Virus record (IMG/VR): IMGVR_UViG_3300021959_006010
Span: 186,001-250,000 of that record
Direction: 5' to 3' (one strand)
Length of the DNA stretch: 64,000 nucleotides
Of this stretch, positions 35,666 through 50,545 are shown one piece after another. The notes under the pieces are model-generated. The model made no database searches. It was not told the DNA's origin and worked only from the letters and a program-made list of their open reading frames with translations. Position numbers and translations under genes: made by a program. Every line of letters starts with the position of its first letter. The first letter of the stretch is position 1.

Positions 35666-35672
35666 AACTCAA

Positions 35673-36832: not shown

Positions 36833-36903
36833 AAAAGTAGTTGACAACTGCGTGTACATATGCTATAGTGTATGTACACGTTAACAATGTAAGAGGGCAT
36901 CTT

Positions 36904-37236
36904 ATGTATTACATTTACGAGAACAGCACAACCTACATTATTGGCAAGCCGGACCGCAATGGTGTAGCCCGTCCGGATCATCGCCAGTCGTATAAGACTA
37001 TGGCCGCAGCGAAAGCAGCACTCACACGCATCTGCAAGGCAGAAGGCTTGTTGCCAACCGATCCCAACTATGCACTGTATCGCTATTCGATTGCAGAGGC
37101 CAGCTACTTCCACAGCATGATTGAAAAGAAAGTACTGCGTAAAGTACTAGAAGGCTTTGGTGGCAAGGAGTATTACGAACCTGTTAACACTCCTGCCTAT
37201 ATGTCACCTGCAAGCGAAACCTACTGGAGCATGTAA
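36904..37236 (+). CDS. Early hypothetical protein
   Basis: Promoter and GAGGGC RBS; start revised to MYYIYE. Confidence 0.7.
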   Translation: MYYIYENSTTYIIGKPDRNGVARPDHRQSYKTMAAAKAALTRICKAEGLLPTDPNYALYRYSIAEASYFHSMIEKKVLRKVLEGFGGKEYYEPVNTPAYMSPASETYWSM

Positions 37237-37364
37237 GATGGATCTACTCCAACGATACCCGAACGCACTCGAGCAGCTAGAAATCCTCAAAAAAGATTAT
37301 TTAGGGGTTGACAATTCTGTAGAGGAGTGCTATATTAGTAGTATAACAAATGGAGGGCAATCCA

Positions 37365-37529
37365 ATGCAAGTAGACCGCGAAAGACTGGAACGCATCGTC
37401 AAGATGGCAGAGAATCTCTACTCTGACGGTGAGTACCGCGATATGGTGTTCGATATACTGCGCACAGAACCTGAGCGTAGTGACAGCGACATTGCAAATG
37501 AATTAGCTATGCGTTGGTACGCTCCGTAA
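37365..37529 (+). CDS. Early hypothetical protein (54 aa)
   Basis: Promoter and GGAGGGC RBS; MQVDRERL... Confidence 0.7.
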   Translation: MQVDRERLERIVKMAENLYSDGEYRDMVFDILRTEPERSDSDIANELAMRWYAP

Positions 37530-37597
37530 AAAAGAGGTTGACACTGTAGCACTTCGGTGCTATAGTGTATGTATAAGTTAACAAAGAGGGCTACACA

Positions 37598-37810
37598 ATG
37601 ACAGATTATTTGTACAACACTGCTTACAAGCTAGGCTGTTACCAAGCTATTGCAGATATGATGCGCCGCGAGATCCGCAACCTTGACGCTGCACAAGCAG
37701 CAGACGACGAGTTTATGGCTGACTGGGCTATGCGCAACCTGCGCTCGCTTGCTACACAGCTTGACGAAGCAGAAGAAAAAATGAAAAAAGAGGTTGACAC
37801 TGTAGCATAG
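37598..37810 (+). CDS. Early hypothetical protein
   Basis: Promoter and GAGGGC RBS. Confidence 0.7.
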   Translation: MTDYLYNTAYKLGCYQAIADMMRREIRNLDAAQAADDEFMADWAMRNLRSLATQLDEAEEKMKKEVDTVA

Positions 37811-37859
37811 TGGTGCTATAGTATATACATAACGTAACAAAAGCAAGAGGGCTTACAAA

Positions 37860-38303
37860 ATGGGTACACGTTCAGCAATCGGTTACAAAACACCAGAAGG
37901 CAAAGTTCGCGCAAAATACAGCCACTACGATGGCTACCCTGCCTACACTGGCAAGATGCTGCAAGAGCACTACCAGGAGGCACGTAAGATTGCACAGATG
38001 GTAGAGCTAGGCGACCAGTCGTTTATCGCTCCAAACGTATTTCCAACAGACAAGTCGCACAGTTTTAACACGCCGCAAGAAGATGTGATTGTGTTTTACG
38101 GACGCGACAGAGGCGAGTCTAATGTAGACGCAAAAGACTTTGACACTGTGCAGGAGTTTGTAGACTACTACGAAGGCGCAGGCTGCGAGTACTTCTACTT
38201 GCACACAGCAAACGGTTGGATCGTACACGACCGCTATGGCGTAGGCAACGATGCTAACGGCTATCCTGTGTTTGACATGCTAGAAAATAAATTGCCTGCA
38301 TAG
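37860..38303 (+). CDS. Early conserved phage protein
   Basis: MGTRSAIG...YSHYDGYP..TGKMLQEHY...FYGRDRGE; promoter and GAGGGC RBS. Confidence 0.75.
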   Translation: MGTRSAIGYKTPEGKVRAKYSHYDGYPAYTGKMLQEHYQEARKIAQMVELGDQSFIAPNVFPTDKSHSFNTPQEDVIVFYGRDRGESNVDAKDFDTVQEFVDYYEGAGCEYFYLHTANGWIVHDRYGVGNDANGYPVFDMLENKLPA

Positions 38304-38371
38304 GAAAAAAGATGTTGACAGTATGCGCTTTTGAGTGCATACTGTTTATATAAGTTAGCAAAGAGGGAACA

Positions 38372-38545
38372 ATGAACGAACTGCTAGAAATGATTGAGGA
38401 CTTGGAAACAATCCAAACACTCACTATGCACCCGGCGCTAGACGAGACTGTTGAGCGCATCCTTGCAAAATACGAAGAGCGCCGCGAAGCATGGGAAGCA
38501 GAGCTTGAGCGCCAATACGAAATGTTCAAAGAGGAACTTGTATAA
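38372..38545 (+). CDS. Early acidic helical protein (57 aa)
   Basis: Promoter and GAGGGA RBS. Confidence 0.65.
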   Translation: MNELLEMIEDLETIQTLTMHPALDETVERILAKYEERREAWEAELERQYEMFKEELV

Positions 38546-38552
38546 ATGAATA

Positions 38553-38629
38553 GGGCCTTTAGCTCAATCGGTTAGAGCACCGGACTCATAATCCGTAGGT
38601 TGCGAGTTCGAGTCTCGCAGGGCCCACCA
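38553..38629 (+). tRNA. tRNA-Ile2 (CAU, lysidine type), reads AUA
   Basis: Cloverleaf with CAT anticodon, paired G1-C72, encoded CCA; resembles ileX-type rather than initiator tRNA. Confidence 0.8.
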
Positions 38630-38634
38630 AGTAA

Positions 38635-38711
38635 CTGCCCTTAGCTCAGCTGGATAGAGCAACAGCCTTCTAAGCTGTGGGTCGTAGGTTCGAATCCTAC
38701 AGGGCAGGCCA
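38635..38711 (+). tRNA. tRNA-Arg (UCU)
   Basis: Cloverleaf with TCT anticodon, GTTCGAATC T-loop, encoded CCA. Confidence 0.93.
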
Positions 38712-38715
38712 ATTA

Positions 38716-38799
38716 GCCCGCGTGGTGGAATAGGTAGACACAAGGGACTTAAAATCCCTCGCTTATGGCGTGCCAGTTCGAGTCTGGCCGCGGGCACCA
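38716..38799 (+). tRNA. tRNA-Leu (UAA)
   Basis: Class II cloverleaf with a long variable arm, TAA anticodon, encoded CCA. Confidence 0.93.
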
Positions 38800-38818
38800 A
38801 ACAAAGAGGAACAGGACA

Positions 38819-38974
38819 ATGATGTGTCCAGAATGTAACATGTCGAAACCTTGGACAAGCTCACGCTGTCCTAACTGCAACCAGAGTGTTGGCATTGTGT
38901 TCGGACTATGGTGGAACACACTTCGAGTGGTACTGACTCTTGCACTGTTCGTTTTTATTGTAAGTTTATTTTAA
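38819..38974 (+). CDS. Zinc-ribbon plus TM small protein
   Basis: CPEC...CPNC followed by a hydrophobic helix; GAGGA RBS. Confidence 0.6.
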   Translation: MMCPECNMSKPWTSSRCPNCNQSVGIVFGLWWNTLRVVLTLALFVFIVSLF

Positions 38975-39046
38975 AAAAGTGGTTGACAAAGGCAACAAAG
39001 GCTGTATACTGTACACAGTTAGATAGAAAACACAGAGGGCAACTAG

Positions 39047-40045
39047 ATGAATATCACTATCGTAGAAGGCACATATAAAATTCGAGGCAACGACACTTCA
39101 GTAGCAGGTCAAACGTTTCCTCTAGTAGAAGAGTTTAGAATGGGTAAGAATGGCGGGTACGTAACTGTTGATGGATCAGCAGTAGCAGGCTTCCCGGATC
39201 GTAATATCAAGATCAAGGTTGTAAGCGCCGACAGTTACGTACCCGCGGGGGAAGGCCCCGCTGATAGACAGCGCGAAGAAAGCGATGAAGAGATCATCGA
39301 ACGAATTCGCACTCGCTTTGACATGCTAAAAGAAATGACCAAGGCTGTCAAGAAGCAAGATGTCAAAGCAATGATCGTAAGTGGCCCTCCAGGTGTTGGT
39401 AAGAGCCACGGCGTAGAAGAAGTACTTGATCGCTATAACACTATGCAGATGTTAGGCGGAGGCAAGCAGTTCGAAGTTATCAAAGGTGCTATGTCGCCCA
39501 TTGGTTTGTACTGCAAGCTTTTCAAGATGGCAGACAAAGGTAAGGTTGTAGTGTTTGACGACTGTGACTCGATCTTCCAGGACGAGCTAAGCCTTAACAT
39601 CCTAAAGGCTGCTCTGGATTCAAAGAAAGATCGTTGGATCCACTGGAACACTGATTCGTTCAAGTTGCGCAACGAAGGTGTGCCAGACAAGTTCAAGTTC
39701 GAAGCAAGTGCGATCTTTATCACGAACCTAAAGTTTGACAAAGTCAAAGGTAAGATGCGTGAGCACTTGGAAGCACTAGAGTCACGCTGTCACTACATGG
39801 ACCTTACCATTGACACAGAACGAGACAAGATGCTCAGAATCAAGCAGGTCATTCGTGACGGTATGCTAGATAGCTATAAGCTGAGTGATGAGATCAAAGA
39901 AGAGATTGTAGACTTCTGCGATATTAATAAGAAGCGACTACGTGAATTGTCCCTAAGAACAGTTTTGAAAGTCGCCGATTTGGCACTTGCCTTTCCAGAT
40001 CGTTGGGAAGCATTTGCCGAAAATACCGTGATGCGTCGAGCCTAG
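39047..40045 (+). CDS. AAA+ family ATPase (early)
   Basis: Walker A GPPGVGKS, Walker B VVFDDCD, IFITN, ALESRC; promoter and GAGGGC RBS. Confidence 0.85.
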   Translation: MNITIVEGTYKIRGNDTSVAGQTFPLVEEFRMGKNGGYVTVDGSAVAGFPDRNIKIKVVSADSYVPAGEGPADRQREESDEEIIERIRTRFDMLKEMTKAVKKQDVKAMIVSGPPGVGKSHGVEEVLDRYNTMQMLGGGKQFEVIKGAMSPIGLYCKLFKMADKGKVVVFDDCDSIFQDELSLNILKAALDSKKDRWIHWNTDSFKLRNEGVPDKFKFEASAIFITNLKFDKVKGKMREHLEALESRCHYMDLTIDTERDKMLRIKQVIRDGMLDSYKLSDEIKEEIVDFCDINKKRLRELSLRTVLKVADLALAFPDRWEAFAENTVMRRA

Positions 40046-40063
40046 CTCCGCTGATTGGTAGAC

Positions 40064-40212
40064 ACTGTGAGCGGGTCCGCCCTCAACTTGCTCACAGTAC
40101 ATTGTGGTTGGACCGCCCTCATCCAACTACAGTAGAGTAGACGAACGCCCTCACGCTCTACTCTAATAGTGCCCTCGCAGTGTATGCCCTCACACTGCGG
40201 GGGCTTTTTTTT
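40064..40212 (+). ncRNA. Four-hairpin RNA with GCCCUC loops, ending in an intrinsic terminator
   Basis: Stems 40064-72/40090-98, 40103-12/40122-31, 40133-41/40157-65 and 40171-83/40192-204. Each loop carries GCCCTC. T8 run at 40205-40212. Confidence 0.8.
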
Positions 40213-40289
40213 GAAAAAAATGGTTGACAAGCTATAGGTTCGGTGTTATATTATTAGTATAAGTTGAAACACTGTAAGAGGGCAAACAG

Positions 40290-40484
40290 ATGATTAAGGT
40301 ACACAACAGAGGTTACGGAACTGGCGAAGCACGTTACATTCCGTTGAGCGAAGTAAACATCCACACACAAAAGATCTGTGAGTTTACAGGCGCTCCGTAC
40401 ATTATCTTCGAGCACAAAGACTATCCGTTGGGTTCTTTGAGTGCTACATTTGATGGCACCTACTGGGACTGTGATTTAGACTAA
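40290..40484 (+). CDS. Early hypothetical protein
   Basis: Promoter and GAGGGC RBS. Confidence 0.7.
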   Translation: MIKVHNRGYGTGEARYIPLSEVNIHTQKICEFTGAPYIIFEHKDYPLGSLSATFDGTYWDCDLD

Positions 40485-40495
40485 GGGAGAATACG

Positions 40496-40666
40496 ATGTA
40501 CGAAGATGAGAACGAAGATTTGATCATTGCTGTACTGGAGCAGATCCGCGAGGATGTCAGCAACGGAGACCTCACAGCAATCGAACAGTTGATTGAAATG
40601 CAGGCACCTTACGCACTGCTGAACTTCCTACCTGAAGAGAAACAGAAACAATTTATGGAAGATTAG
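40496..40666 (+). CDS. Early acidic hypothetical protein (56 aa)
   Basis: GGGAGA RBS; MYEDENEDL... Confidence 0.65.
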   Translation: MYEDENEDLIIAVLEQIREDVSNGDLTAIEQLIEMQAPYALLNFLPEEKQKQFMED

Positions 40667-40671
40667 GAGAC

Positions 40672-40805
40672 TATTTTCCGGATGCGTCCGTGTAGAGGAC
40701 CCGGCCGGCTAAAAGCACCATTGTTAGTTTCAGTCAAGCTAGAGCGGCAACGTCAATAAGGCCGTGCGGTGCGATTGGAGATACTAGGGGCGTATTCGGA
40801 AAATA
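40672..40805 (+). ncRNA. Unidentified structured RNA candidate
   Basis: 18-bp closing stem 40672-89/40788-805 with 3 G:U pairs; internal crossing pairings CGGCC/GGCCG and GCACC/GGTGC. Confidence 0.6.
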
Positions 40806-40885
40806 GTTTCAAATTAGGGGTTGACAAATCCCACAGTAGATCATATACTGTATATAACAGTTAGGAAATAGCAAGAGGGCAAATC

Positions 40886-41194
40886 ATGCAATTCGTAATT
40901 ACTACACAGTTCCTGGAAAACTACGGCGCACACTGCGAGGACGGTAAGTTCAAGTCCGGCAATGCATATTGGAAGATGAAGGGAGGCACAGACTACTGTG
41001 TGTCAGGTCTTGATCGCATCCAAGATGCGGTTGCGTTCGTGGCAGCCAAGGAGATGCATAATAGCATCGGCGCTAAGGAGTTTCCAGTAGAGTGGAAGAC
41101 CTATGCAGAGTGGGAGCGTGATCTTCCGGAAGACGAGGACTACAGAGAGTTCTTGCTCGAGCAACTGAAACACGTAGACCCGAGGGAGGTGTAA
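40886..41194 (+). CDS. Early hypothetical protein
   Basis: Promoter and GAGGGC RBS. Confidence 0.75.
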   Translation: MQFVITTQFLENYGAHCEDGKFKSGNAYWKMKGGTDYCVSGLDRIQDAVAFVAAKEMHNSIGAKEFPVEWKTYAEWERDLPEDEDYREFLLEQLKHVDPREV

Positions 41195-41195
41195 T

Positions 41196-41357
41196 ATGTT
41201 TCGTCAATATTTCGTATACTACGATGGTCGGTTCCAAGGAACTGTAATGGCACTTTCAGAACAGAGTGCGCTGGACAAAGGTTGCCAGATGGTAGGTGTG
41301 AGTGCTAGTGCCTACTCGGGTCGAGCACGCCGTTTGGTAGAAGTAATTCGCAAATAG
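41196..41357 (+). CDS. Early hypothetical protein (53 aa)
   Basis: GGAGGT RBS; MFRQYFVYYDG... Confidence 0.6.
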   Translation: MFRQYFVYYDGRFQGTVMALSEQSALDKGCQMVGVSASAYSGRARRLVEVIRK

Positions 41358-41422
41358 AGGTTGACAAACCGTCAATCCTTTGTTATAGTGTATGTATAAG
41401 TTAAACAAACGAGGGCAAAGAT

Positions 41423-41650
41423 ATGTTTAATGCACGAGACGAAGCACTAGAATTGGTAGAGAACGGCGTAGTGTCAGCAGAGTATTTGCTAACAGCCTGC
41501 CTCAAGTATATGTCAACAGACGATGTTGCAGACATGCTAGATGCTAACGAACTTTCCGATCGCTTCCTAGAAGATGACGAGCCAGACGTAGACGAGGCTC
41601 AGGAGTGGGAAGACTTTGGCGAAGTTGGTTACGAACCGGAGTATATCTAA
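41423..41650 (+). CDS. Early acidic hypothetical protein
   Basis: Promoter and GAGGGC RBS. Confidence 0.7.
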   Translation: MFNARDEALELVENGVVSAEYLLTACLKYMSTDDVADMLDANELSDRFLEDDEPDVDEAQEWEDFGEVGYEPEYI

Positions 41651-41811
41651 TGGCAGGAGCAGACAACACTCGTCGCATTTACATCACAGTCGCGCTGGAG
41701 ATACTGCGTGACGCAAACGAACAGGAAGTAATCGCAGAGTGCGATTACACCTTTGAACATCCCGACATTGTCGATACGGAAATTATGGGAGAGGACGAAT
41801 ACTATGCCTAA
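41650..41811 (+). CDS. Early acidic hypothetical protein (53 aa)
   Basis: TAATG overlap; MAGADNTRR... Confidence 0.55.
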   Translation: MAGADNTRRIYITVALEILRDANEQEVIAECDYTFEHPDIVDTEIMGEDEYYA

Positions 41812-42355
41812 TTGGTGCAATAACTCATTTTCAATCACCGGCTCTACTGAGTCAATCAAAGAACTGTGGGACACAGCACAGACTGCCGACAACGGTGAAT
41901 TCGGCTTGCTCAATGCTATTATGCCAATGCCCAAAGAGCTAGAAGGCACAACGGCTCCTAGCGAAGGTGGCGACAACTGGTATAACTGGCGAGTAGAGAA
42001 CTGGGGCACCAAGTGGGAGGTCTCAGACGAAGGACTCGAGTATACGGATCACGGAGATGGCACTGCATCAATCGATGGTTGGTTTGACAGTGCATGGGCT
42101 CCACCCATTGGTGTGTATGAGCAATTGGCTGCCGACTTTGACTCGTGTGTGATCGAGTGCTCTTACTACGAGCCCGGCATGGACTTCGGAGGCTTTTGGT
42201 CAAGTGAGAAAGGAGACATCTACTTTGAAAGCCTAGACGATATGCTAAAAGAAGATCCGGACACTTGGAGCGACGAGTTCCGAGAATTTGAAGCAGAGTA
42301 TGATCTGCTGTCAGAAGAGTGGCGCTTCGAAGACGAAGAAGTAGAATTAGATTAA
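41804..42355 (+). CDS. DUF1281/YubB ferredoxin-like-domain protein
   Basis: MPNWCNN start, WYNWRVENWGTKW, FDSAWAPP, YYEPGMDFGG. Confidence 0.75.
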   Translation: MPNWCNNSFSITGSTESIKELWDTAQTADNGEFGLLNAIMPMPKELEGTTAPSEGGDNWYNWRVENWGTKWEVSDEGLEYTDHGDGTASIDGWFDSAWAPPIGVYEQLAADFDSCVIECSYYEPGMDFGGFWSSEKGDIYFESLDDMLKEDPDTWSDEFREFEAEYDLLSEEWRFEDEEVELD

Positions 42356-42418
42356 AAAAAGAGGTTGACACAGTGAGCCATTGGTGCTATAGTATAGATA
42401 ACAGTTAGGAGGGCACCT

Positions 42419-42679
42419 ATGGCTTACTGGACACACACCGTCAAACCAATTGGTTGTTTCGTAGAGAAAGAGGTAGGCAACTACTTCGAGTATAGCGTCA
42501 ACGACGATCCACTCACAGGCTTCAACGAAGACTTCCCACACAAGATTTGGGTAGGAGACGGCTACCGTTATGGAAATGTCAAGAAGACGGTTGCTGTGAT
42601 CTGTGTAGACGAAGACGAATACGGCTTGCCTGTAGTAGAGAAGTGGTTCTTGAAAAAGAATACAGCTTATGCAAATTAG
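42419..42679 (+). CDS. Early hypothetical protein
   Basis: Promoter and GGAGGGC RBS. Confidence 0.75.
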   Translation: MAYWTHTVKPIGCFVEKEVGNYFEYSVNDDPLTGFNEDFPHKIWVGDGYRYGNVKKTVAVICVDEDEYGLPVVEKWFLKKNTAYAN

Positions 42680-42745
42680 GGGTTGACAAAACACTAGACT
42701 GAGTGCATACTGTATATATAGTTAGAAATTAGGAGGGCTCCTACA

Positions 42746-42961
42746 ATGGCAACAGAATTAAAAAGCACAACAGAAGATGTTAGCTTGACACGCTTTTGGG
42801 GCGGCGAAGCTCGCGGCACTTGTGTACAGGTTACAACAACCTACACAGCAGATCCAAAAGACTTCTTTAAGCATATAAGTTTGACACGCGAAGAGGCTGC
42901 AAGTGTAGCAGCCGACTTGATGAAGTTTGCACAAGGCACAGAAGAGGAGCACTGGGCATGA
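42746..42961 (+). CDS. Early hypothetical protein
   Basis: Promoter and GGAGGGC RBS. Confidence 0.75.
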   Translation: MATELKSTTEDVSLTRFWGGEARGTCVQVTTTYTADPKDFFKHISLTREEAASVAADLMKFAQGTEEEHWA

Positions 42962-43164
42962 TTAAGTCACTATTGGTTGGATTGTTTGTAGGCGGCGCAT
43001 TGTTTGTTCTTGCAGACTATGCGCTTTCGATTCCAGACGTAAAGATGAGCTATGCTACAAACACCTGCGTAGAAGTTATCAATTATCCTAGTACGCTGTT
43101 TGGCACTACCAACTTCAGCTGTGAGTTGATGCCAACAAAATTTAATCACATTTGGGTAAAATAG
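42958..43164 (+). CDS. Small membrane-anchored Cys-containing protein
   Basis: ATGA overlap; N-terminal TM helix; two Cys. Confidence 0.6.
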   Translation: MIKSLLVGLFVGGALFVLADYALSIPDVKMSYATNTCVEVINYPSTLFGTTNFSCELMPTKFNHIWVK

Positions 43165-43228
43165 GGGTTGACAAAACCCCTAGCTGGTGGTATACTGTAT
43201 ATAACAGTTAGGAAACGAGGGTTAGAAA

Positions 43229-43579
43229 ATGAAAAAATTCGCAATCAACACAGCAAGCAATCTAATGTCAGCAGCCGTAATTGGCGGCGTATTGTTGTTC
43301 GCGGCGGCACCAGCACACGCTTGGGGCGAACGTGAGCAAGGCATTCTTACTGGAGTGATTGGCACACTGATCATCCAAGACATCAATCGTGGCAACAACG
43401 GTCACACCACACACGGTCATCAGCATCCGCAACAGCCTGTAGTCATCCAGCACACCACTCGCAACTGCGGCGTTGAAGTTCGCACAGTATACACAGACGG
43501 TGGCACACGTTCGATTACCGATACTGTTGATGCGTGTACTGGTCGATTGATTCAACGTGTAGAACGCAAGAGCTGGTAA
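43229..43579 (+). CDS. Exported early protein
   Basis: Signal-like N-terminus ...APAHA-WGEREQG; promoter and GAGGGT RBS. Confidence 0.7.
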   Translation: MKKFAINTASNLMSAAVIGGVLLFAAAPAHAWGEREQGILTGVIGTLIIQDINRGNNGHTTHGHQHPQQPVVIQHTTRNCGVEVRTVYTDGGTRSITDTVDACTGRLIQRVERKSW

Positions 43580-43699
43580 TATGTATATAGTCGAAGACAA
43601 CGACGGTCGTACGATTGCAATATGCAGTCGGCTAGAAGATGCTCGTGCATACACGGCAACCAACCTTGATAATGTAACCTATACCATAAAGGAAAACAC

Positions 43700-43969
43700 A
43701 TGCAATTCTTCGAAGCAACAGAACAGCAACGAAAGCTCGCAGACATCGGCCGACAAATGATGGACTGGAGCGAGAACTACGGTCGCACCCAAGGCCTACG
43801 AGACGTAACGGACAACGGCCTGCGAACACTGAACGAAATGAGTCACGTGGGCAACATGCTCACTCACTACGGTGCTCCTTATGGAACTAGTTCCAAAGAC
43901 TTCTCAGAAGCAGACCGCAAATTAATTGCTCAGTTCCTACAGAAAGAGGTTGACATCGAGCGCAAGTGA
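43700..43969 (+). CDS. Early hypothetical protein
   Basis: AAGGA RBS; MQFFEA... Confidence 0.65.
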   Translation: MQFFEATEQQRKLADIGRQMMDWSENYGRTQGLRDVTDNGLRTLNEMSHVGNMLTHYGAPYGTSSKDFSEADRKLIAQFLQKEVDIERK

Positions 43970-44011
43970 TGGTATACTGTATATAACAGTTAAGCAATAG
44001 AGGGCAAAACT

Positions 44012-44287
44012 ATGCGTAAACTACAGCAATTCGTCGACGATCAGAACGTGTGGAGATCACTCTTCAACACTGCAGAGATCACTTTCCCACTAAGCCAAGC
44101 ACATGTAAACGACTTAGGCAAGAGCATTGACTCAAAGCTTTCGCCAGAAAACCTACATCAAGACGGAGAGCGCGACTACAAAGAAGCGATCCGCATTGGC
44201 AACTACCTTAACGATGTACTGGACGAGCTGAATGCATACTGCAAACAGAACAGTCTAGTAGAACCAACTGTATGGGAGGCATGGTAA
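44012..44287 (+). CDS. Early hypothetical protein
   Basis: Promoter and GAGGGC RBS. Confidence 0.7.
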   Translation: MRKLQQFVDDQNVWRSLFNTAEITFPLSQAHVNDLGKSIDSKLSPENLHQDGERDYKEAIRIGNYLNDVLDELNAYCKQNSLVEPTVWEAW

Positions 44288-44532
44288 TGAACCTAGCACA
44301 AACATTCTTCCAGGCTGTTAACAAACCTGAGAACTGGTACAAAGAAGACGGCATGAGCCGCATCAATTGGAACTTCGTAGACGCTGACTGCTACATGGCA
44401 TGCGGCAGAGAGTATCCAACAACAGATGCATTCTACGACGAGTGGAACGCATTGTGCGACATCTATGTTGCAAGCTATAACAGCCACAGTCTACAAATGA
44501 ACCAAATACTGGTTGACACAGTACCGGCTTGA
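44287..44532 (+). CDS. Early hypothetical protein
   Basis: TAATG overlap; GGAGG RBS. Confidence 0.65.
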   Translation: MNLAQTFFQAVNKPENWYKEDGMSRINWNFVDADCYMACGREYPTTDAFYDEWNALCDIYVASYNSHSLQMNQILVDTVPA

Positions 44533-44577
44533 AGCTATACTGTAAGAGTAAGTTAAACAAAGCAAGAGGGCATTGCA

Positions 44578-44922
44578 ATGAACTACACTGTAAACGAAAT
44601 CCAAAACATCCTAGCAGAAGCAACTGAAGCAGCCTACACTGCCGCGGACGCATTTGAACAGGAATACTTTCCGGACAACGGCTGGGGAGCATGTGGCTTT
44701 GCTTGGGTAGACATATTCGGCATTAAAGGCAACACCAAGCTGGGCCGTGCGCTTAAGGCAGCAGGCATTACTAAGAGCTACAACGGCGCACACCAAATAT
44801 GGAACCCGTCAAAGTATCCTACACAGAATGTAGACACACTAGAAGCAGGTGCACGAGCGGCAGCAGATGTGTTCCGCAAGTATGGCTTTGACAAAACATA
44901 CGCAGGCAGTCGACTAGACTAA
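44578..44922 (+). CDS. Early conserved phage protein
   Basis: GACGFAWV motif; promoter and GAGGGC RBS; last gene of the cassette. Confidence 0.75.
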   Translation: MNYTVNEIQNILAEATEAAYTAADAFEQEYFPDNGWGACGFAWVDIFGIKGNTKLGRALKAAGITKSYNGAHQIWNPSKYPTQNVDTLEAGARAAADVFRKYGFDKTYAGSRLD

Positions 44923-44946
44923 TACGATCAAACAGTAGAGAGACTA

Positions 44947-44980
44947 GGGGCAAGTTCTAACGCTTGCCTTTTTTCTTTTC
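44947..44980 (+). terminator. Intrinsic terminator closing the early cassette
   Basis: GGGGCAAG-TTCTAACG-CTTGCCTT hairpin followed by a T-run. Confidence 0.7.
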
Positions 44981-45192
44981 AAAATAAAAAAATAAAAAAA
45001 TTTTTTCTCGAGGGGGGCCGGGGCTTATATAAAAAGTCTTGTAAAAACAAGCACTTAGCTTAATGAGCAGTTTTAAAAATGGTGTGATGCAAAATCACCA
45101 CCTCACTTCTATAAGTACTCCACCACAATTTTTTGCGCAGCAGATTTTTTTACCCTGTAGACCCATTTCGGACAATGTATATAAAAGCCTCT

Positions 45193-45802
45193 ACACAATA
45201 AGCGTATACTCGCGCAACACAATAAGCGTAGGGAGCTCTTGTGTAACAAAGCGAGCTCTGCGTAACACACACGTGAGTGCAAGAGTCGCTTCCTGAAAGG
45301 AAAGACTCTCCAACGAGCGTGTTAGTTGTCGCTTTGCGAAGCAAAAGACGACTTTGAGTTTGCTCATATATAGCGTGTACTACAGAACCTCTACAGTGTG
45401 CGCTATACAGTGATAAGTAATATGGACATTATGTACGAAATAAAACTTATATATACTCCTGAGCCATACTCGCTAACTCTAAAAGAGTCAATCACATACT
45501 GTGCTACAGTAGAGTTATTCTTGCGCGGCATACACACATCACAGTGCAGTGCCAGTAGAATAGCTTTTGAGTCAGATAGAGATCGCATGCTAGGTTTGCT
45601 TATACTATCAGAGAGTACAAGCTTTACTCCTGTAATTATATAGGTGTCTGTGCGCTAATATAAGCGTCATACAGCAGGTTTAGGATTGTTTGGCATCGTG
45701 TGCAACTAAACGCTGATTTTCTTGCGCAAAAGCGTTTACCGCTTCGCGGCTTGTAGGTTTACCGCAGCGGCTTCGCCGTTTTTTGGGCTTAAACGCTTCG
45801 CG
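45193..45802. repeat. Non-coding block with direct repeats and GCGAAGC mini-hairpins
   Basis: ACACAATAAGCGTA x2 (45193, 45217); TTTGCGAAGCAAA at 45333-45345 (+); three GCGAAGC-core hairpins on minus at 45739-49, 45768-78 and 45794-802. Confidence 0.7.
45421..45643 (+). CDS. Possible hypothetical protein
   Basis: Open frame with FESDRDRMLGLLILSE, similar to the C-terminus of 32667-32873; start uncertain. Confidence 0.4.
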
Positions 45803-45807
45803 CTTGT

Positions 45808-46245
45808 TTAGAACTTGTACTCGAAGTTTTGGCAGGTCTTGCCCTTGCGTAGCAACTGTGCTCCGTTGCGTGTGTGGAAACGTTCTGCCATTTCTGTTAG
45901 GGGACTCAGTGTGCAGTAGCGTTGTATGTGTGGATGATCACGCTGTATAACTTCTGCTGTAGAGAATATGATGTCTCGTCCTGCGCCTCGCGCATAACTC
46001 CATACTGTATAGAACATTGCAGTGTCGGGCCGGGTGTTGTGCGCAAGTTCTTCTTCAGTTAGTGCCGTGCCCTGTGTATATGCTACACACAGTACAGCAG
46101 CTACCACACCGTCCCATTCCAGCGCATATACTTCTCTGCCGTCTCGAAGTCTCCATTCTAGATCAATGTGTGGACGAACAGGATCGTCCAGTATATAACT
46201 CTTTTTCCAATCTCTAGTGTCAAACTGTACCAGTTGCGTTTCCAT
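45808..46245 (-). CDS. Hypothetical protein, possibly GNAT-like fold
   Basis: AGGAGA RBS; FYTVWSYARGAGRDII resembles an acetyl-CoA-binding loop. Confidence 0.5.
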   Translation of the reverse strand: METQLVQFDTRDWKKSYILDDPVRPHIDLEWRLRDGREVYALEWDGVVAAVLCVAYTQGTALTEEELAHNTRPDTAMFYTVWSYARGAGRDIIFSTAEVIQRDHPHIQRYCTLSPLTEMAERFHTRNGAQLLRKGKTCQNFEYKF

Positions 46246-47658
46246 TTATTCTCCTAGGTTATTAAGAAATGCTTTGAGTTTTGAACTGTCTGTTTCAGCT
46301 CGTATCTTTCCTACACTTGCGCCTTCGCTTGGATCTTCCTGCGGCTGTGCTTGTGTGCGTTTGATGTTTGCTACAATTGAACTTGCAGTTGTGTTGCCTG
46401 TGCTGGTAGCAGCTTCGTCATCTTCTCCAATGTCAAATATGCGCAGTGTGTCTACATCAAAACCTAGATCTACTTTTTGTCCTACGCCCGAACTTGATCG
46501 TGTCTTCATCAGCTGTATTTGATAGCGTCCACGCTCACGCATTGCTCTACTAGTAAAGATACCAATTAGATTGTCTGCTGTGTTAATCTTTGAAATACCA
46601 CCCGAGATGTGGCTGTGATCAAACTCAATCTCTTCAACACTAGAACGATTCAACTGACTTGCTGTTACAAAGATACAGTTTAGTTCCATTGCCAAGTTGC
46701 GTAGTTCTTCTGACACATACTTGTCTTTAACAAACAAGTTCTCTGCTGAAATCTTTTGTCCAATTGGATGCATAAGATCTAGATAGTCTATGAGCAGTAC
46801 ATCCACTTTGCGTCCTGTCTTGATCTCATACTCCTTGAGGTACGCTCTAACATCGTTTGCGTTCTTGCCTGTGGGCATGTACTTGACTTGAAACGCACCA
46901 CTCTTCTTGCCAATCATCTTGACTTTCATTTCAACATCATCAAGACTCTTAAAGATATCACGACTTGGAATCTCTGAAGTCATAGCATCAAGACGCATGC
47001 TCACTAGATTCTCTGAAAGCTCAAATGTCAAGTACATCACGTTCATGCCTGCAAGACACCAGTTAACACCTAGGTTAGCCATAAACAAACTCTTGCCCGA
47101 ACCCGAACCACCTGCAAAGATGTTAAGCTCGCCTCTGTTGAATCCGCCAAACAGTTTCTTGTCTAGTGCGGGCCAGCCTGTGCTTACTTGTCCGTTCTTG
47201 TCTTTGATTGCTTCTAGTCGACTGCGCGGATCAGCAAAGTAGTCTGTGCCTAGATCCTTTTGCAGTCCAATCTGTACTGCTCGCTTAACCAAATCCTCAA
47301 CCGGGCCGTACTCGCCTTTCTCAAGCAAGTCTGCTGAGTCAAGTATTGCTTTCTCAAGTGCCTTGTGTCTACTGAACGTTTCGAACTCCTGTAGCAGCCA
47401 GTCATAGTGATTCTCCTGTAGGTCACCTGGATCTTTTAGTTGTGCGTCTGTAGCTGCATTGATCATATCAAATGTAGGCAATGCATTATGTTCTTCTACA
47501 TAGTCCTTTAAAAACTTTGCTGGTTCTACCAAACGTCTGTCAAATGTCTTTGGATCAAACACACCCTGACAGCGTACAAAGCTCTCAGCGTCTGTCATAA
47601 ACATTTCTAAATATACTTTTTGGATATCATATCCATAGTCGGTGTTTTGTCTTGTCAT
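46246..47658 (-). CDS. Replicative DnaB/gp41-like helicase
   Basis: TGWPALDKKLFGG, Walker A GGSGSGKS, LLIDYLDLM, TASQLNR, SKINTADN. Confidence 0.92.
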   Translation of the reverse strand: MTRQNTDYGYDIQKVYLEMFMTDAESFVRCQGVFDPKTFDRRLVEPAKFLKDYVEEHNALPTFDMINAATDAQLKDPGDLQENHYDWLLQEFETFSRHKALEKAILDSADLLEKGEYGPVEDLVKRAVQIGLQKDLGTDYFADPRSRLEAIKDKNGQVSTGWPALDKKLFGGFNRGELNIFAGGSGSGKSLFMANLGVNWCLAGMNVMYLTFELSENLVSMRLDAMTSEIPSRDIFKSLDDVEMKVKMIGKKSGAFQVKYMPTGKNANDVRAYLKEYEIKTGRKVDVLLIDYLDLMHPIGQKISAENLFVKDKYVSEELRNLAMELNCIFVTASQLNRSSVEEIEFDHSHISGGISKINTADNLIGIFTSRAMRERGRYQIQLMKTRSSSGVGQKVDLGFDVDTLRIFDIGEDDEAATSTGNTTASSIVANIKRTQAQPQEDPSEGASVGKIRAETDSSKLKAFLNNLGE

Positions 47659-47776
47659 TCTTTTGTGTGCCTTACGTTAGTTCTTGCTTTTACACTACCA
47701 CAGTTTTTACAATAAACTATTGTAACATAAAATTTATGTTTGTCAACTTCAAGAGTCTGATTGTGTTCTGTTATTT

Positions 47777-49246
47777 CTACTTGTTTGCAGCAGCCGTCCA
47801 AACCTTAACTCCATATTGTTTTTCAAATGCTTGTGCATCTTCTACAGTGTTAACAATGGGTTTACCCTTGATGTTAAGTGAGGTATTTAGTAGCACAGGA
47901 CAGCCTGTAGCTTCGTACCAACGTTCTAGCAGTTTTCTAAAGCCCACGCTTTGCGTTGAAGAAACTGTCTGTACCCGAGAGGTGCCGTCCCTGTGCGTGA
48001 TTGCAGGTAGTCCAGGATCCTTGCAAGTTGCAGTGTATTGCATGTAGGGGTTTGCATATCCGTCGAAATAGGTAGACGCATGTTCCTCCAATACTGCTGG
48101 CGCAAAAGGTCTAAACTTCTGTCGTTGTTTGATTTCGTTAACTCTATCTTTAATGTCTGGCCTTCTGGGGTCTGCAAGGAGGGAGCGGTGTCCAAAAGCT
48201 CTGGGCCCGAACTCTGCCCTGCCGTTGGCCACGCCAACAATACCAGTAGTAAGCAACTCGTTAAGTACTTCTTCAACAGGATAATCTCCTTCTATGTTAT
48301 AACCTGTGTACACATGATCCATTTCCATGTGTTGTTTTTTATGGGCTAGTACACAACCTATTGCACTGCCTGCATCACCCGGGTTAGGCATGATCCATAC
48401 GTTATCGAAAAACTTGTATGCTAAATGGTTAGCACTGCAATTTAACGCACATCCTCCCATTAACACAAGGTTTTTGCTAGGCGCCATTATGCGGGCTACA
48501 TTCAAAATACCTTGAAAAATCTTTTCATACAGGTTCTGGGCTGCTGCCGCTATGTCAAAATAGTCTTGTTCAGTGGTCAAATCCTTGCGCCAGTCTAAGC
48601 ACCCTCTATGTAAATTGCGTTTAAAAGTAATAGGGTGTCCATAAGGGTCAACAAAATCTTCAACCATAGCTTGGTACAAACGATCTGGGTCACCGTATGC
48701 AGCCATACCCATAAGAATGTATTCGTCTTCTTGAGGTTTTAATCCAACCCTTTGCGTGATTGCCGAGTACCATAGTCCCACGGAATGTGGATATTTTTGG
48801 GAATAGACCTTTTTGAGTCTTCCTTCTTTACCATGCCAGATAGTAAGTGTATCAAACTCTCCAATGCTGTCGATACTAATAACGCAGGCTTCTGTAAAAG
48901 GACTAGTATAATAACCGGCAGCAGCATGGGAAAGATGATGATCAGTATACCTAATAGGAGCATGTATCCCATAAGATCCAAGATACTTACGAATATTGTT
49001 TTCACCCAACCGTATTCCTTGCCCTGCTCTAAATTGTCTAACAGTTTTGACAAGGGGTCTTTCATACCAAATAATTTCATCTGGTTCTCCCCATTTCCTT
49101 GCATATTCAATTAACTCGTTATTTAAGTCGGGGTCGTTTTTTATACCGCTAAAACGTTCGCTATGACTCGCAAACTCTAGTCCGTCTTCTGAAAAAACAG
49201 CTAGAGCAGCATCATGACTGTTAGCACTTATACCCCATGTAATCAT
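47777..49246 (-). CDS. Carbamoyltransferase (NodU/CmcH/TobZ family)
   Basis: SHDAALA, HHLSHAAAGY, GGCALNC, GDAGSAIG, GRAEFGPRAFGHRS, RQKFRPFAP, LNTSLN. Confidence 0.92.
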   Translation of the reverse strand: MITWGISANSHDAALAVFSEDGLEFASHSERFSGIKNDPDLNNELIEYARKWGEPDEIIWYERPLVKTVRQFRAGQGIRLGENNIRKYLGSYGIHAPIRYTDHHLSHAAAGYYTSPFTEACVISIDSIGEFDTLTIWHGKEGRLKKVYSQKYPHSVGLWYSAITQRVGLKPQEDEYILMGMAAYGDPDRLYQAMVEDFVDPYGHPITFKRNLHRGCLDWRKDLTTEQDYFDIAAAAQNLYEKIFQGILNVARIMAPSKNLVLMGGCALNCSANHLAYKFFDNVWIMPNPGDAGSAIGCVLAHKKQHMEMDHVYTGYNIEGDYPVEEVLNELLTTGIVGVANGRAEFGPRAFGHRSLLADPRRPDIKDRVNEIKQRQKFRPFAPAVLEEHASTYFDGYANPYMQYTATCKDPGLPAITHRDGTSRVQTVSSTQSVGFRKLLERWYEATGCPVLLNTSLNIKGKPIVNTVEDAQAFEKQYGVKVWTAAANK

Positions 49247-49455
49247 ACAGTTATATCTACTTTACTTCCTTGCTGTACAGGATACACAACTTCTCCTTTT
49301 GCATTATAAGTTGTATAAACTACTTCGGATATTTTTGACGAGCCGCCGTCTTTTTGTGTATGTTGAACGTGCGTTACAGTTTCAACAGGTCCAGATGTTT
49401 GAACTCTAGTATAAGCACTTATTACGTTAATTGGGCTAATAGGATCGATACTCAT
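49243..49455 (-). CDS. Hypothetical protein
   Basis: ATGA overlaps on both sides. Confidence 0.6.
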   Translation of the reverse strand: MSIDPISPINVISAYTRVQTSGPVETVTHVQHTQKDGGSSKISEVVYTTYNAKGEVVYPVQQGSKVDITV

Positions 49456-49574
49456 TTGTAAATAAAAGGGTCCTTTTCTCTAAGTTCTTTTAATCGTTTC
49501 CTTATTTTAATTTCTTCTTTAATTTTATCATATGGCCAGCGTATCCAAGACCAAATCGTTTTTAACCAAACCAT
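49452..49574 (-). CDS. 40-aa basic peptide
   Basis: MVWLKTIW...KRLKELREKDPFIYK*; bridges primase and the next gene by overlaps. Confidence 0.55.
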   Translation of the reverse strand: MVWLKTIWSWIRWPYDKIKEEIKIRKRLKELREKDPFIYK

Positions 49575-50545
49575 TTTTTTGCTCCTAGTCTAATTTTAAG
49601 AGGTGACTCTTCTGCACTTGTTGCAATACTATGCAATGTGTATAGTCTACCGTACTTATCTACTGCATCACCTATGTCATTAATGTCTTGTGTCCAGTTT
49701 GGCATACTAACGCTAAATCCTAGTTCAATTGCACGTTCAACAAGTTTGCTACCAGCCTTGTCTCTATCTGGTACAACAATAATCTGCTTCTGCAATCTAT
49801 TCAACAGCATTGCTTGTTGATCGCTTATTTCTGATCCGCCTAATGCACAACCTTCTACATGTATAGCATCAATCTGTCCTTCGCACACAATAGCAAATAC
49901 TTTGTTATAACCTTGTTCGTCTAATCCGTATACAAAGCCAGGCTGTACTTCTGTAAGGTATTTTGGCTTTTTATCTGGTACAACACTTCGAGCAGTCCAG
50001 CCTACGATGCGTCCTTCAAAGTAGAAGGGAATAATAAGACGATCACGATAACCTAAACTAGGTGACCAGTAGTAGTCTGTATCATCTACGTTTAGATTAC
50101 GTGACGCCATATATTCAAGTACAGACATACTAAACTTGTTAAAATCTGTAATGTCTGTAATTTTAACAGCATCATCTGGTAACGGAACAGTATTGAAGGT
50201 AGGCAACTCTGCTATGCGAGTTTTAGCCTCAACACCCTCGTTTTCTCTCATTACTTCTAGTGCTACCTTGTTGATTATATCGTCAGGTGCTCCTGTCCAC
50301 TGTAAGAGCTTACGCAGTTTATGAGAAAAGTTTCTGCCCGGTTGCCAGGATGCTTTGAAGCCGCAGTTAAAGCAATGATAACTTACGCCTCCATCGGGGT
50401 TGCTTATTAAGCCACCGCGTCCACGAGTGTCTGCCGTATGTCCATTATGATGGCAACACGGCGCATTAAAGGATAGCCAGCCACTAGGAGTTTGTTTCCT
50501 TTTAGCAGGCAAGTATGTCAGAACTGTATCGTTAACTACACTCAT
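49562..50545 (-). CDS. DNA primase (gp61-like)
   Basis: Zn finger CCHH...YHCFNCG, IIPF..EG.IVGWTAR, TOPRIM VCEGQIDA and VPDRD. Confidence 0.9.
   Translation of the reverse strand: MSVVNDTVLTYLPAKRKQTPSGWLSFNAPCCHHNGHTADTRGRGGLISNPDGGVSYHCFNCGFKASWQPGRNFSHKLRKLLQWTGAPDDIINKVALEVMRENEGVEAKTRIAELPTFNTVPLPDDAVKITDITDFNKFSMSVLEYMASRNLNVDDTDYYWSPSLGYRDRLIIPFYFEGRIVGWTARSVVPDKKPKYLTEVQPGFVYGLDEQGYNKVFAIVCEGQIDAIHVEGCALGGSEISDQQAMLLNRLQKQIIVVPDRDKAGSKLVERAIELGFSVSMPNWTQDINDIGDAVDKYGRLYTLHSIATSAEESPLKIRLGAKKWFG

What the first reader, a model, noticed from the sequence alone, without database searches (positions are those of the whole stretch)
44980..45805. Right boundary with four GCGAAGC mini-hairpins and direct repeats: ssDNA origin or injection-stop-like element
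Seen: A/T tracts and a G-run at ~44980-45025, ACACAATAAGCGTA twice, TTTGC-GAA-GCAAA on plus (45333-45345), and CCGC-GAA-GCGG, CGGC-GAA-GCCG and CGC-GAA-GCG on minus within 65 bp just after the helicase operon. Established: d(GCGAAGC) is an unusually stable mini-hairpin, and GNA-triloop hairpins occur in ssDNA phage origins and N4 virion-RNAP promoters. T5 ends its first-step-transfer DNA with a repeat/palindrome-rich stop signal. Inference: the ~12-kb cassette may be a terminal repeat or first-transferred segment bounded by this block.
Basis: partly seen in the sequence, partly recalled or inferred. Interest (0 to 1): 0.62.

Follow-up and report, generated by a model that had tools for sequence, protein, structure and literature searches.

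The report
Hairpin array beside jumbo-phage early cassette
The four GCGAAGC mini-hairpins are real and conserved across many uncultured marine jumbo phages, as part of a non-coding module at the right edge of an early-gene/tRNA cassette that is probably a long terminal repeat; what the hairpins do is not settled.

Summary
Every listed feature sits at the stated coordinates. The three minus-strand C-GAA-G hairpins (45739-45802) are the only such cluster in the 275-kb phage record.

They are conserved. About two dozen related marine jumbo-phage contigs carry 1-4 hairpins with the invariant heptamer GCGAAGC and varying, complementary outer stems. Wherever both are on the contig, the array lies 730-910 bp right of a conserved A/T-tract plus G-run motif.

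The region is a module, not one element:
- the terminator of an ~11.5-kb early cassette (19 sigma70-like promoters, 3 tRNAs);
- the G-run and invariant sequence blocks;
- the hairpin array, in the gap where that gene converges with the primase-helicase operon.

The terminal-repeat idea is partly supported. The nearest named relatives (PA5oct, XacN1) have long terminal repeats of early genes and tRNAs. Exact contigs in two metagenomes drop about 1.9-fold within 44823-45113. That is at the G-run, about 750 bp left of the hairpins. Contig depth is weak evidence, and the left edge is untested.

Hairpin function is unresolved. My best guess is transcript-end/insulator hairpins; single-stranded-DNA priming or barrier signals are a live rival. 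N4-type promoters are contradicted, and a T5-type injection stop has no support.

The parts
33448..44922 (+). Early cassette: small genes, each with its own sigma70-like promoter, plus three tRNA genes (38553-38799). Candidate long terminal repeat.
   Evidence: Nineteen + strand promoter matches lie at 33448-44512, out of 72 in 275 kb. tRNAs. The same promoter-dense cassette with the same three tRNAs is found in relatives G001 and G002. It is single-copy in the record.
44578..44922 (+). Last cassette gene (114 aa, PHROG 22149, function unknown).
   Evidence: Homologues lie next to the module in L003, L012, L014, L017, L025, L048, L062, L063, L071, L072 and L074.
44946..44981 (+). Canonical intrinsic terminator of the cassette: a 10-pair stem followed by a T-run.
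   Evidence: An equivalent hairpin plus T-run is present in relatives.
44981..45035 (.). A/T tract (44981-45006), conserved G-run motif CTCGAGGGGGGYCGGGGC (45007-45024) and a TATA(T)AAA box. The contig-depth step falls in or next to this stretch. Candidate end of the terminal repeat and terminase processing site.
   Evidence: Alignment A3. Eight further relatives. Unique in the genome. Depth step within 44823-45113.
45072..45175 (.). Conserved non-coding block with invariant words AATCACC (45093-45099), TCTRTAAGTACTYC (45108-45121) and ACCCATTTCGG (45161-45171), spaced by A/T runs.
   Evidence: Nineteen distinct relatives. No consensus RNA structure on either strand. Unique in the genome. The unit is duplicated in tandem in L098 and L138.
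45193..45230 (.). Two exact 14-nt direct repeats, ACACAATAAGCGTA, in a stretch that varies between relatives.
   Evidence: Not conserved in alignment A3.
45282..45353 (+). Two paralogous hairpins with GAA loops on the + strand (45282-45309 and 45324-45353). The second holds TTTGC-GAA-GCAAA.
   Evidence: Direct repeat D1 with compensated inner stems. DNA fold z = -2.0. Only L003 shares it at 85% identity; GNA hairpins on + are not consistently conserved elsewhere.
45431..45643 (+). Conserved small gene (70 aa; FESDRDR motif) with a ferredoxin-like beta-alpha-beta-beta-alpha-beta fold. Function unknown.
   Evidence: Homologues at the same place in 10 other contigs, 24-76% identical. AlphaFold pLDDT 95.8. 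Only generic ferredoxin/RRM-like fold matches, none at E <= 0.001. No Pfam or PHROG family.
45708..45737 (.). 7-bp stem AAACGCT/AGCGTTT around a 16-nt loop, directly beside the hairpin array.
   Evidence: Kept in L014 and L018. L025 has one pair changed on both sides (G-C to A-T).
45738..45805 (-). Tandem array of three C-GAA-G mini-hairpins (GCGAAGC cores at 45741-45747, 45770-45776 and 45795-45801), with the flank word TTTACCGC twice.
   Evidence: TTTACCGC occurs only here in the genome. Conserved in relatives with invariant GCGAAGC and varying outer stems.
45808..50545 (-). Replication operon converging on the module: DnaG-like primase (49562-50545), carbamoyltransferase (47777-49246), DnaB-like helicase (46246-47658) and a 145-aa GNAT-like protein (45808-46245).
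   Evidence: PHROG and Pfam hits. The '145-aa GNAT-like' label rests on a sub-threshold Pfam match to the malonyl-CoA decarboxylase C-terminal domain and on the look of its C-terminal motif, so it is a lead only.

Best explanation
The interval is the conserved right-edge module of an ~11.5-kb early-gene/tRNA cassette in an uncultured marine jumbo phage of the PA5oct/XacN1 kind.

Shown. The module consists, left to right, of:
1. the cassette's own terminator;
2. an A/T tract plus G-run motif and three invariant sequence words;
3. a variable repeat-rich stretch;
4. a small conserved gene;
5. a tandem array of GCGAAGC hairpins, in the 164-nt gap where that gene converges with the primase-helicase operon.

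Inferred, step 1. The cassette is a long direct terminal repeat, and the A/T-tract/G-run/invariant-word stretch (about 44.95-45.17 kb) is its inner right edge, recognised or cut by terminase.

Inferred, step 2. The hairpins act on transcripts. They sit directly behind the stop codon of whichever gene ends an operon that points at the cassette. There they stop or cap that RNA, with GAA on the RNA. Read on the other strand, they stop the small gene's RNA. The effect would be that middle and late transcription does not run into the early cassette.
For: Module and cassette:
- Gene map and families.
- Terminator.
- Promoter density. tRNAs.
- The same cassette is present in G001 and G002.
- The G-run and invariant words are conserved in 19 distinct relatives and unique in the genome.
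- The array lies 730-910 bp from the G-run in the window and in all six further contigs that hold both.

Terminal repeat:
- Exact contigs fall from ~29 to ~15 (X1) and from ~46 to ~25 (X2) within 44823-45113.
- No extra related contigs are summed in 45164-46345.
- PA5oct's DTR of early genes shows double coverage. XacN1's DTR carries tRNAs.
- TerL is 54% identical to PA5oct's.

Transcript-end role:
- The first hairpin starts 3 nt after the stop codon. It lies 2-3 nt after it in L025 and L014 and about 25 nt in L018, although the upstream genes differ between relatives.
- In G001 a single copy of the same hairpin follows the stop codon of another gene, on the left side of the cassette. GAA is again on that gene's sense strand, pointing at the cassette.
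- The 5th stem pair is most often G.U on the GAA strand, which would be an A.C mismatch on the other strand.
- On the TTC strand, T is the commonest base at positions +2 to +5 after the stems, in 41-65% of units.
- The phage uses host-type and T4-late-type promoter words.
Against: - The consensus terminator scan calls none of the three hairpins. Stems are only 4-6 bp, and the GAA strand has an A-run rather than a U-run after the first hairpin.
- A terminator needs structure, not an invariant loop. Yet GCGAAGC is identical in 40 units from diverged phages, and that heptamer is known for exceptional stability as DNA (PMC13037366).
- Ordinary terminators elsewhere in this genome do not use it.
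- Nearest-neighbour folding energies are no better than shuffles.
- No RNA run holds the phage.
- The depth step comes from contig averages, which the tool says not to rank. It could instead reflect a second strain or phage sharing the cassette exactly.
- The left edge was not tested, and the record is only 77% complete.
Confidence: 0.4

Rival explanations
1. The hairpins work as single-stranded DNA. When the minus strand is exposed, the very stable d(GCGAAGC) mini-hairpins form and mark a site at the inner edge of the terminal repeat. Exposure could come as lagging-strand template for a fork moving into the cassette, as the displaced strand of an R-loop, or after end resection. The site would be a priming signal for the adjacent DnaG-like primase and DnaB-like helicase, or a barrier that stops replication or resection from crossing the repeat boundary.
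For: - The heptamer and its C-G closing pair are invariant while the outer stems vary. That fits the DNA mini-hairpin rule (GCGNAGC, sheared G.A) described for the G4 and St-1 origins and for ssiA of RSF1010 (PMC13037366).
- Loop choice is extreme: 18 C-TTC-G hairpins against at most 3 of any other loop class in 11 phages.
- The locus is unique per genome.
- In G001 the two sites flank the cassette in inverted orientation. That is the geometry expected for forks entering from either side.
- An A/T tract, a G+C block, short direct repeats and replication genes lie nearby.
Against: - The DNA state was not tested in any way.
- The inverted geometry fits transcription equally well.
- A dsDNA phage with its own helicase-primase needs no special priming hairpins.
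- In relatives the array lies 1.5-7 kb from the helicase.
- GNA hairpins on the + strand are not consistently conserved, so a two-strand ssiA/ssiB-like pair is not supported.
Confidence: 0.25
2. The array and its flanks (TTTACCGC, AGCGGTA-type words, AAACGC words) are double-stranded binding sites for a protein. They would serve as iterons of an origin, as a terminase small-subunit (pac-like) site, or as operators of the adjacent 70-aa protein.
For: - Flank words recur: TTTACCGC occurs twice here and nowhere else in the genome, and TACCGC/GCGGTA words recur in the relatives' arrays.
- The small gene and the array are always neighbours.
- The locus is unique, and the number of units varies between phages.
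Against: - The outer stem bases change while staying complementary: CCGC, GCGC, CGGC, CTGC, GTGC, ACGC, TCGC. That fits a folded strand better than a fixed duplex site.
- The small protein's fold is generic, with no DNA-binding family match.
Confidence: 0.15
3. A T5-like injection-stop signal: the cassette is a first-step-transfer segment, and the repeat/palindrome block halts DNA entry until pre-early proteins are made.
For: By analogy only: a promoter-dense cassette of small early genes, followed by a repeat- and palindrome-rich non-coding block.
Against: No two-step transfer is known for this myovirus-type clade (my own knowledge). The block's parts have simpler readings, and none of these tools addresses DNA entry.
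Confidence: 0.04
4. N4-type hairpin promoters read by a virion RNA polymerase.
For: Stem length (4-6 bp) and the 3-nt purine loop resemble N4 early promoters (PMC13037366).
Against: - The hairpins lie after stop codons in a convergent gap, with no gene downstream on the GAA strand before the cassette terminator.
- The words enriched upstream of genes are sigma70-like and T4-late-like.
- There is only one locus per genome.
Confidence: 0.02

Closest known systems
Long direct terminal repeats of jumbo myoviruses (PA5oct 39 kb; XacN1 66 kb) and the SPO1 13-kb host-takeover repeat
   Same: - A block of many small, early-transcribed genes with host-type promoters, plus tRNAs.
- The terminase and helicase are closest to PA5oct's (54-55% identity).
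- A non-coding, repeat-rich stretch sits at the inner boundary. PA5oct has 12-nt direct repeats right after position 39,080.
- An apparent ~2-fold depth step.
   Different: - The repeat is not proven here: the evidence is contig depth only, at one edge only.
- The cassette is shorter, about 11.5 kb.
- The boundary sequences are unrelated to PA5oct's.
- PA5oct has no GCGAAGC hairpin array: only two imperfect matches in 287 kb.
d(GCGAAGC)/GCGNAGC DNA mini-hairpins at ssDNA initiation sites (G4, St-1, alpha3 complementary-strand origins; ssiA of RSF1010)
   Same: The exact heptamer, the C-G closing pair, the GNA loop, extension to 4-6 bp stems, clustering, and proximity to primase and helicase genes.
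   Different: - A large dsDNA phage, not an ssDNA replicon.
- The hairpins follow stop codons in a convergent gap.
- No assay of priming.
- The opposite-strand partner hairpins are not conserved.
Structured 3'-end elements: intrinsic terminators, T4 C(UUCG)G intercistronic hairpins, enterobacterial REP/BIME arrays
   Same: Tandem short G+C hairpins directly after stop codons between convergent genes, and a T-rich 3' flank on one strand.
   Different: - A triloop with invariant sequence.
- No canonical U-run on the GAA strand.
- One or two loci per genome rather than genome-wide.
- Not called by the consensus terminator scan.
T5 injection-stop signal at the inner end of the left terminal repeat
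   Same: A repeat- and palindrome-rich non-coding block at the inner end of a (probable) terminal repeat of early genes.
   Different: No evidence of two-step DNA transfer. A different virus lineage.

Membership tests
Long direct terminal repeat (PA5oct/XacN1 type) | About 2-fold read depth over the whole repeated segment, with sharp edges. | tested here: inconclusive
   Exact contigs fall 28.7-29.3 to 15.2-16 (X1) and 44.7-46.4 to 19-25 (X2) inside 44823-45113. These are contig averages, not reads. A shared-strain explanation is not excluded.
Long direct terminal repeat (PA5oct/XacN1 type) | Fixed physical termini: read-start pile-ups, or long reads ending at the edges. | not testable with these tools
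   Only Logan contigs were available. No contig of a relative ends at the G-run.
Long direct terminal repeat (PA5oct/XacN1 type) | Content of early, host-promoter-driven small genes and tRNAs; terminase akin to that of DTR-packaging relatives. | tested here: met
   Nineteen sigma70-like promoters and 3 tRNAs. TerL is 54% identical to PA5oct's.
Canonical intrinsic (Rho-independent) terminator | Stem of at least 5 pairs followed by a U-run. | tested here: not met
   The scan finds 44946-44971 (+) and 45101-45084 (-), but none of the three array hairpins. The middle one comes closest, with a 6-pair stem including G.U followed by four T's on +.
DNA mini-hairpin GCGNAGC | Heptamer G-C-G-N-A-G-C with a closing C-G pair and a sheared G.A pair. 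| tested here: met
   Met at the sequence level: four copies here, and the heptamer is invariant in 40 units from relatives.
DNA mini-hairpin GCGNAGC | Actually forms in single-stranded DNA in vivo. | not testable with these tools
   Nearest-neighbour folding does not model its special stability: z = -1.5 and -1.0.
N4-type hairpin promoter | The hairpin lies upstream of early genes and is read by a virion RNA polymerase. | tested here: not met
   The hairpins lie downstream of genes in a convergent gap. Promoter words are sigma70-like and T4-late-like. Whether a vRNAP gene is present was not tested.
Iteron-type origin | Three or more direct repeats of 17-22 bp beside an A/T-rich unwinding element and an initiator gene. 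| tested here: inconclusive
   Only two-copy repeats were found: a 14-nt repeat x2, TTTACCGC x2, and 22-nt hairpin paralogues. An A/T tract is present. No initiator was recognised.
Known RNA families (Rfam 15) | A match at or near the gathering score. | tested here: not met
   No match in 44850-45900 better than E = 3, and all are far below gathering.
T5 injection-stop signal | DNA entry pauses at the site until pre-early proteins are made. | not testable with these tools
   Needs infection experiments.

The most novel reading that the evidence does not exclude
A large clade of marine jumbo phages uses tandem d(GCGAAGC) DNA mini-hairpins as cis-acting single-strand signals that flank and define the long terminal repeat. 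Together with the invariant G-run module 0.8 kb away, they would act as priming sites or as replication/resection barriers. That would be the first sequence-defined boundary and processing apparatus for long-DTR jumbo phages.
Probability: 0.22. Interest if true: 0.75.

Novelty: new variant of a known kind. Interest (0 to 1): 0.5.

Why it matters
How jumbo phages with 10-66-kb terminal repeats mark, cut and duplicate those repeats is unknown. This module gives a conserved, sequence-defined candidate for the inner repeat boundary in a clade with hundreds of environmental members. It also ties the boundary to an unusually constrained hairpin motif whose only known natural roles are at ssDNA initiation sites and N4 promoters. 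If the hairpins are merely transcript-end elements, they are still a distinct, easily recognised class of phage 3' signal and a handy marker for annotating this clade.

Tried and rejected
- Coding reading of the array. One minus frame is open through it (KREAFKPKK...), but it has no start codon and is out of frame with the upstream gene. In relatives the array follows different genes. Rejected.
- Rfam at gathering and at E <= 10: nothing credible.
- Consensus RNA structure of the conserved block 45060-45179: 0 pairs on + and 9 weak pairs without covariation on -. It is therefore read as a primary-sequence (DNA-level) element. A minus-strand terminator-like hairpin at 45101-45084 is present in only about 11 of 19 relatives by eye.
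- Folding energies of the array and of the + hairpins against shuffles: unremarkable.
- Similarity to the PA5oct repeat boundary: none by sequence, and PA5oct lacks the hairpins.
- Inverted repeat between the candidate left edge (32.4-33.5 kb) and the right module: only a 9-mer, not significant.
- Contigs of relatives ending at the G-run, as a sign of a physical end: none.
- GNA hairpins on + as a conserved partner of the array (an ssiA/ssiB-like pair): present in about half the modules and equally often on the other strand, close to chance.
- Small protein: no Pfam or PHROG family, only unnamed viral clusters in the Atlas, and fold searches giving only generic ferredoxin/RRM/Mesd-like matches.
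- The phage collection holds no close relative of the region or of the small protein.
- No RNA runs hold the phage.
- Read laying was given 5,901 letters.

Full report
**What the window is.** The window is bases 186001-250000 of a single 275,366-bp virus record, estimated 77% complete.
- Its DnaB-like helicase and large terminase are only 54-55% identical to the nearest named phages, the Pseudomonas jumbo phage PA5oct group. Atu_ph07, XacN1-like and Rak2-like phages follow.
- More than 600 environmental relatives exist in IMG/VR.
- The runs that hold the sequence are marine and estuary metagenomes.
- Words enriched upstream of genes are GGTTGACA-type -35 boxes and GATAAATA/TATAAATA, which resembles the T4 late promoter box. 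This suggests the phage uses host-type RNA polymerase.

**Observation.**
- GCGAAGC occurs 29 times in the record, nearly always as GGC-GAA-GCA codons. Only the four copies at 45336-45801 have complementary flanks.
- The three copies within 62 bp are the only such cluster. About 0.0006 such clusters are expected by chance.

**Anatomy.** The 885 bp between the plus-strand cassette (last gene ends 44922) and the minus-strand replication operon (last gene ends 45808) is not one block. From left to right:
1. A canonical terminator at 44946-44981.
2. A 26-nt pure A/T tract, the motif CTCGAGGGGGGYCGGGGC and a TATA(T)AAA box (44981-45035).
3. A ~100-nt block with three invariant words (45072-45175).
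4. A variable stretch holding the two exact 14-nt repeats and two paralogous GAA-loop hairpins on + (45193-45353). The inner stems of the two hairpins differ but are compensated.
5. A real gene, 45431-45643 (+). Its 70-aa product has homologues at the same position in ten other contigs. It folds with pLDDT 95.8 into a beta-alpha-beta-beta-alpha-beta domain. No specific family is assignable.
6. The 164-nt convergent gap. It holds a 7-bp stem (45708-45737) and the three C-GAA-G hairpins on the minus strand (45738-45805). The first hairpin starts 3 nt after the operon's stop codon.

**Conservation of the hairpin array.**
- The word ACCGCTTCGCGG, with at most one mismatch, occurs in 20 of the first 80 related loci. 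It is always on the locus strand opposite the helicase gene, so GAA reads on the helicase coding strand.
- G+C-rich stems closed by C-GAA-G occur 1.5-7 kb downstream of the helicase in about two dozen loci.
- In an unbiased scan of the 330 nt after the small gene in 11 phages, C-TTC-G triloop hairpins appear 18 times. Every other loop class appears at most 3 times.
- Forty distinct units align without gaps. GCGAAGC is invariant, while the two outer pairs take the forms CCGC, GCGC, CGGC, CTGC, GTGC, ACGC and TCGC with their complements. These units were selected for complementarity, so the diversity of pairs is the information, not the pairing itself.
- The unselected fifth pair is most often G.U on the GAA strand.
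- Flanks are also constrained (TTTA before and C/T-TTT after on the TTC strand). TTTACCGC occurs only here in the genome.
- Four close relatives keep TTTACCGCTTCGCGGC identical, although neighbouring proteins are only 25-76% identical.

**The array belongs to a larger module.** Wherever enough sequence is available, the array lies 730-910 bp to the right of the G-run motif.
- The G-run and the invariant words are conserved in 19 distinct relatives and unique in this genome.
- They show no consensus RNA structure on either strand. I therefore read them as a DNA-level (protein-read) element.
- The unit is duplicated in tandem in two relatives.

**The cassette.** Nineteen of the record's 72 sigma70-like promoter matches lie on the + strand between 33448 and 44512. 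About three would be expected.
- The cassette carries tRNA-Met, tRNA-Arg and tRNA-Leu and is single-copy in the record.
- Relatives G001 and G002 have the same promoter-dense cassette with the same three tRNAs, ending in the same module.
- To its left, 32.6-33.43 kb is non-coding and full of ACTAC-type short repeats.

**Is it a terminal repeat?** Three lines point that way.
1. PA5oct has a 39,080-bp direct terminal repeat recognised by double coverage. It holds 105 mostly early genes and two abundant non-coding RNAs (PMC7318152). XacN1 has a 66-kb repeat carrying its tRNAs, and SPO1's 13-kb repeat is a host-takeover module (PMC5852040).
2. The terminase is closest to PA5oct's.
3. The depths of exact-match Logan contigs step down, as tabulated here.

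| Run | Contig span | Depth |
|---|---|---|
| X1 | 42800-43970 | 28.7 |
| X1 | 43977-44564 | 29.1 |
| X1 | 44542-44838 | 29.3 |
| X1 | 44823-45113 | 24.1 |
| X1 | 45109-46022 | 15.2 |
| X1 | 45997-46542 | 16 |
| X1 | 47588-47953 | 19.3 |
| X1 | 48335-48700 | 10.8 |
| X2 | 42800-43970 | 46.4 |
| X2 | 43979-44563 | 44.7 |
| X2 | 44829-45113 | 29.6 |
| X2 | 45178-46026 | 24.8 |
| X2 | 45997-46542 | 19 |
| X2 | 47605-47940 | 25.3 |
| X2 | 48188-48700 | 23.4 |

That is a ~1.9-fold step inside 44823-45113 in both runs. The summed depth of everything at least 85% alike in 45164-46345 is hardly above that of the exact contigs.

*Caveats.*
- The tool states that contig depth should not be ranked.
- The two samples may not be independent.
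- A second strain or phage sharing the cassette exactly would give the same picture.
- The left edge could not be examined.

I put the terminal-repeat reading at about 0.6. If it is right, the edge is at the terminator / A/T-tract / G-run stretch, about 750 bp left of the hairpins. The PA5oct boundary is likewise a non-coding stretch with short direct repeats, but it is unrelated in sequence and has no GCGAAGC hairpins.

**What the hairpins do: for a transcript-level role.**
- They directly follow the stop codon of whatever gene ends the operon facing the cassette.
- In G001 a lone copy of the first hairpin follows the stop codon of a different gene on the left side of the cassette. GAA is again on the sense strand, pointing at the cassette. 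Homologues of that gene sit between helicase and array in L025 and L018.
- The fifth pair is G.U on the GAA strand.
- The other strand has T-rich 3' flanks.

**What the hairpins do: against it, and for a DNA-level role.**
- The consensus terminator scan calls none of the three.
- Loop and closing pair are invariant, which a terminator does not need.
- The heptamer is the classic ultra-stable DNA mini-hairpin found at ssDNA priming sites and N4 promoters (PMC13037366).
- The motif is confined to one or two loci per genome.
- The inverted placement in G001 fits replication forks entering the cassette as well as it fits transcription.

**Where I land.**

| Reading | Confidence |
|---|---|
| Transcript-end / insulator hairpins | about 0.4 |
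| ssDNA priming or barrier signals | 0.25 |
| Duplex protein-binding repeats | 0.15 |
| T5-like injection stop | 0.04 |
| N4-type promoters | 0.02 |

**Verdict.** The kind of thing, a structured non-coding module at the inner edge of a jumbo-phage early cassette or terminal repeat, is known in outline from PA5oct. The invariant GCGAAGC array and the G-run module are a new, clade-wide variant.

Noticed in passing
window 4771-5164 (-): The phage record carries a complete two-piece (permuted) alphaproteobacterial-type tmRNA gene (Rfam alpha_tmRNA, 127.8 bits; ARAGORN tag peptide ANSNFKPEVFANFDEVAIAA). This hints at an alphaproteobacterial host.
   Followed up: no
window 32618-33440: A non-coding stretch left of the first cassette promoter. 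It is dense in ACTAC/ACTACACTA short repeats and has GGCCCCGCTGCTA twice. This is the candidate left edge of the putative terminal repeat. G001 has similar GGCCCCGC repeats right after its left-side hairpin.
   Followed up: partly
window 32622-32634 (+) and 45781-45793 (-): The word TTTA(A)GCCCAAAA follows a stop codon on each outer flank of the cassette, in inverted orientation. These are the only two non-coding copies in the genome. As an inverted repeat it is too short to be significant.
   Followed up: partly
window 45093-45107: The invariant block reads AATCACCACCTCAC on +, and GAGGTGGTGATT on -. This closely resembles the 3' end of 16S rRNA, or its complement (a very strong Shine-Dalgarno-like word). 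I judged the resemblance from memory of the 16S 3' end. Whether it is transcribed is unknown.
   Followed up: no
L098 and L138 (relatives), right of the G-run: The unit TCTGTAAGTACTTC ... CCCTTTTCG of the conserved block is duplicated in tandem in these two phages.
   Followed up: no
window 45199, 45223, 45660: TAAGCGT occurs three times in the module: inside both 14-nt repeats and just after the small gene. The third copy sits in a word, AAGCGTCATACAGC, that is conserved after the small gene in L098, L138, L153 and L157.
   Followed up: no
window 47777-49246 (-): A NodU/CmcH-type carbamoyltransferase gene sits between the primase and helicase genes (PHROG 1601, E = 3e-100; Pfam Carbam_trans_N and _C).
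   Followed up: no
L082 (G001 59072-60382): A 436-aa repeat-rich protein is followed by the lone hairpin, on the left of the cassette in G001. Its homologues in L025 and L018 sit on the right, between helicase and array. The cassette's neighbours have therefore been rearranged while the hairpin stayed at the gene's 3' end.
   Followed up: partly
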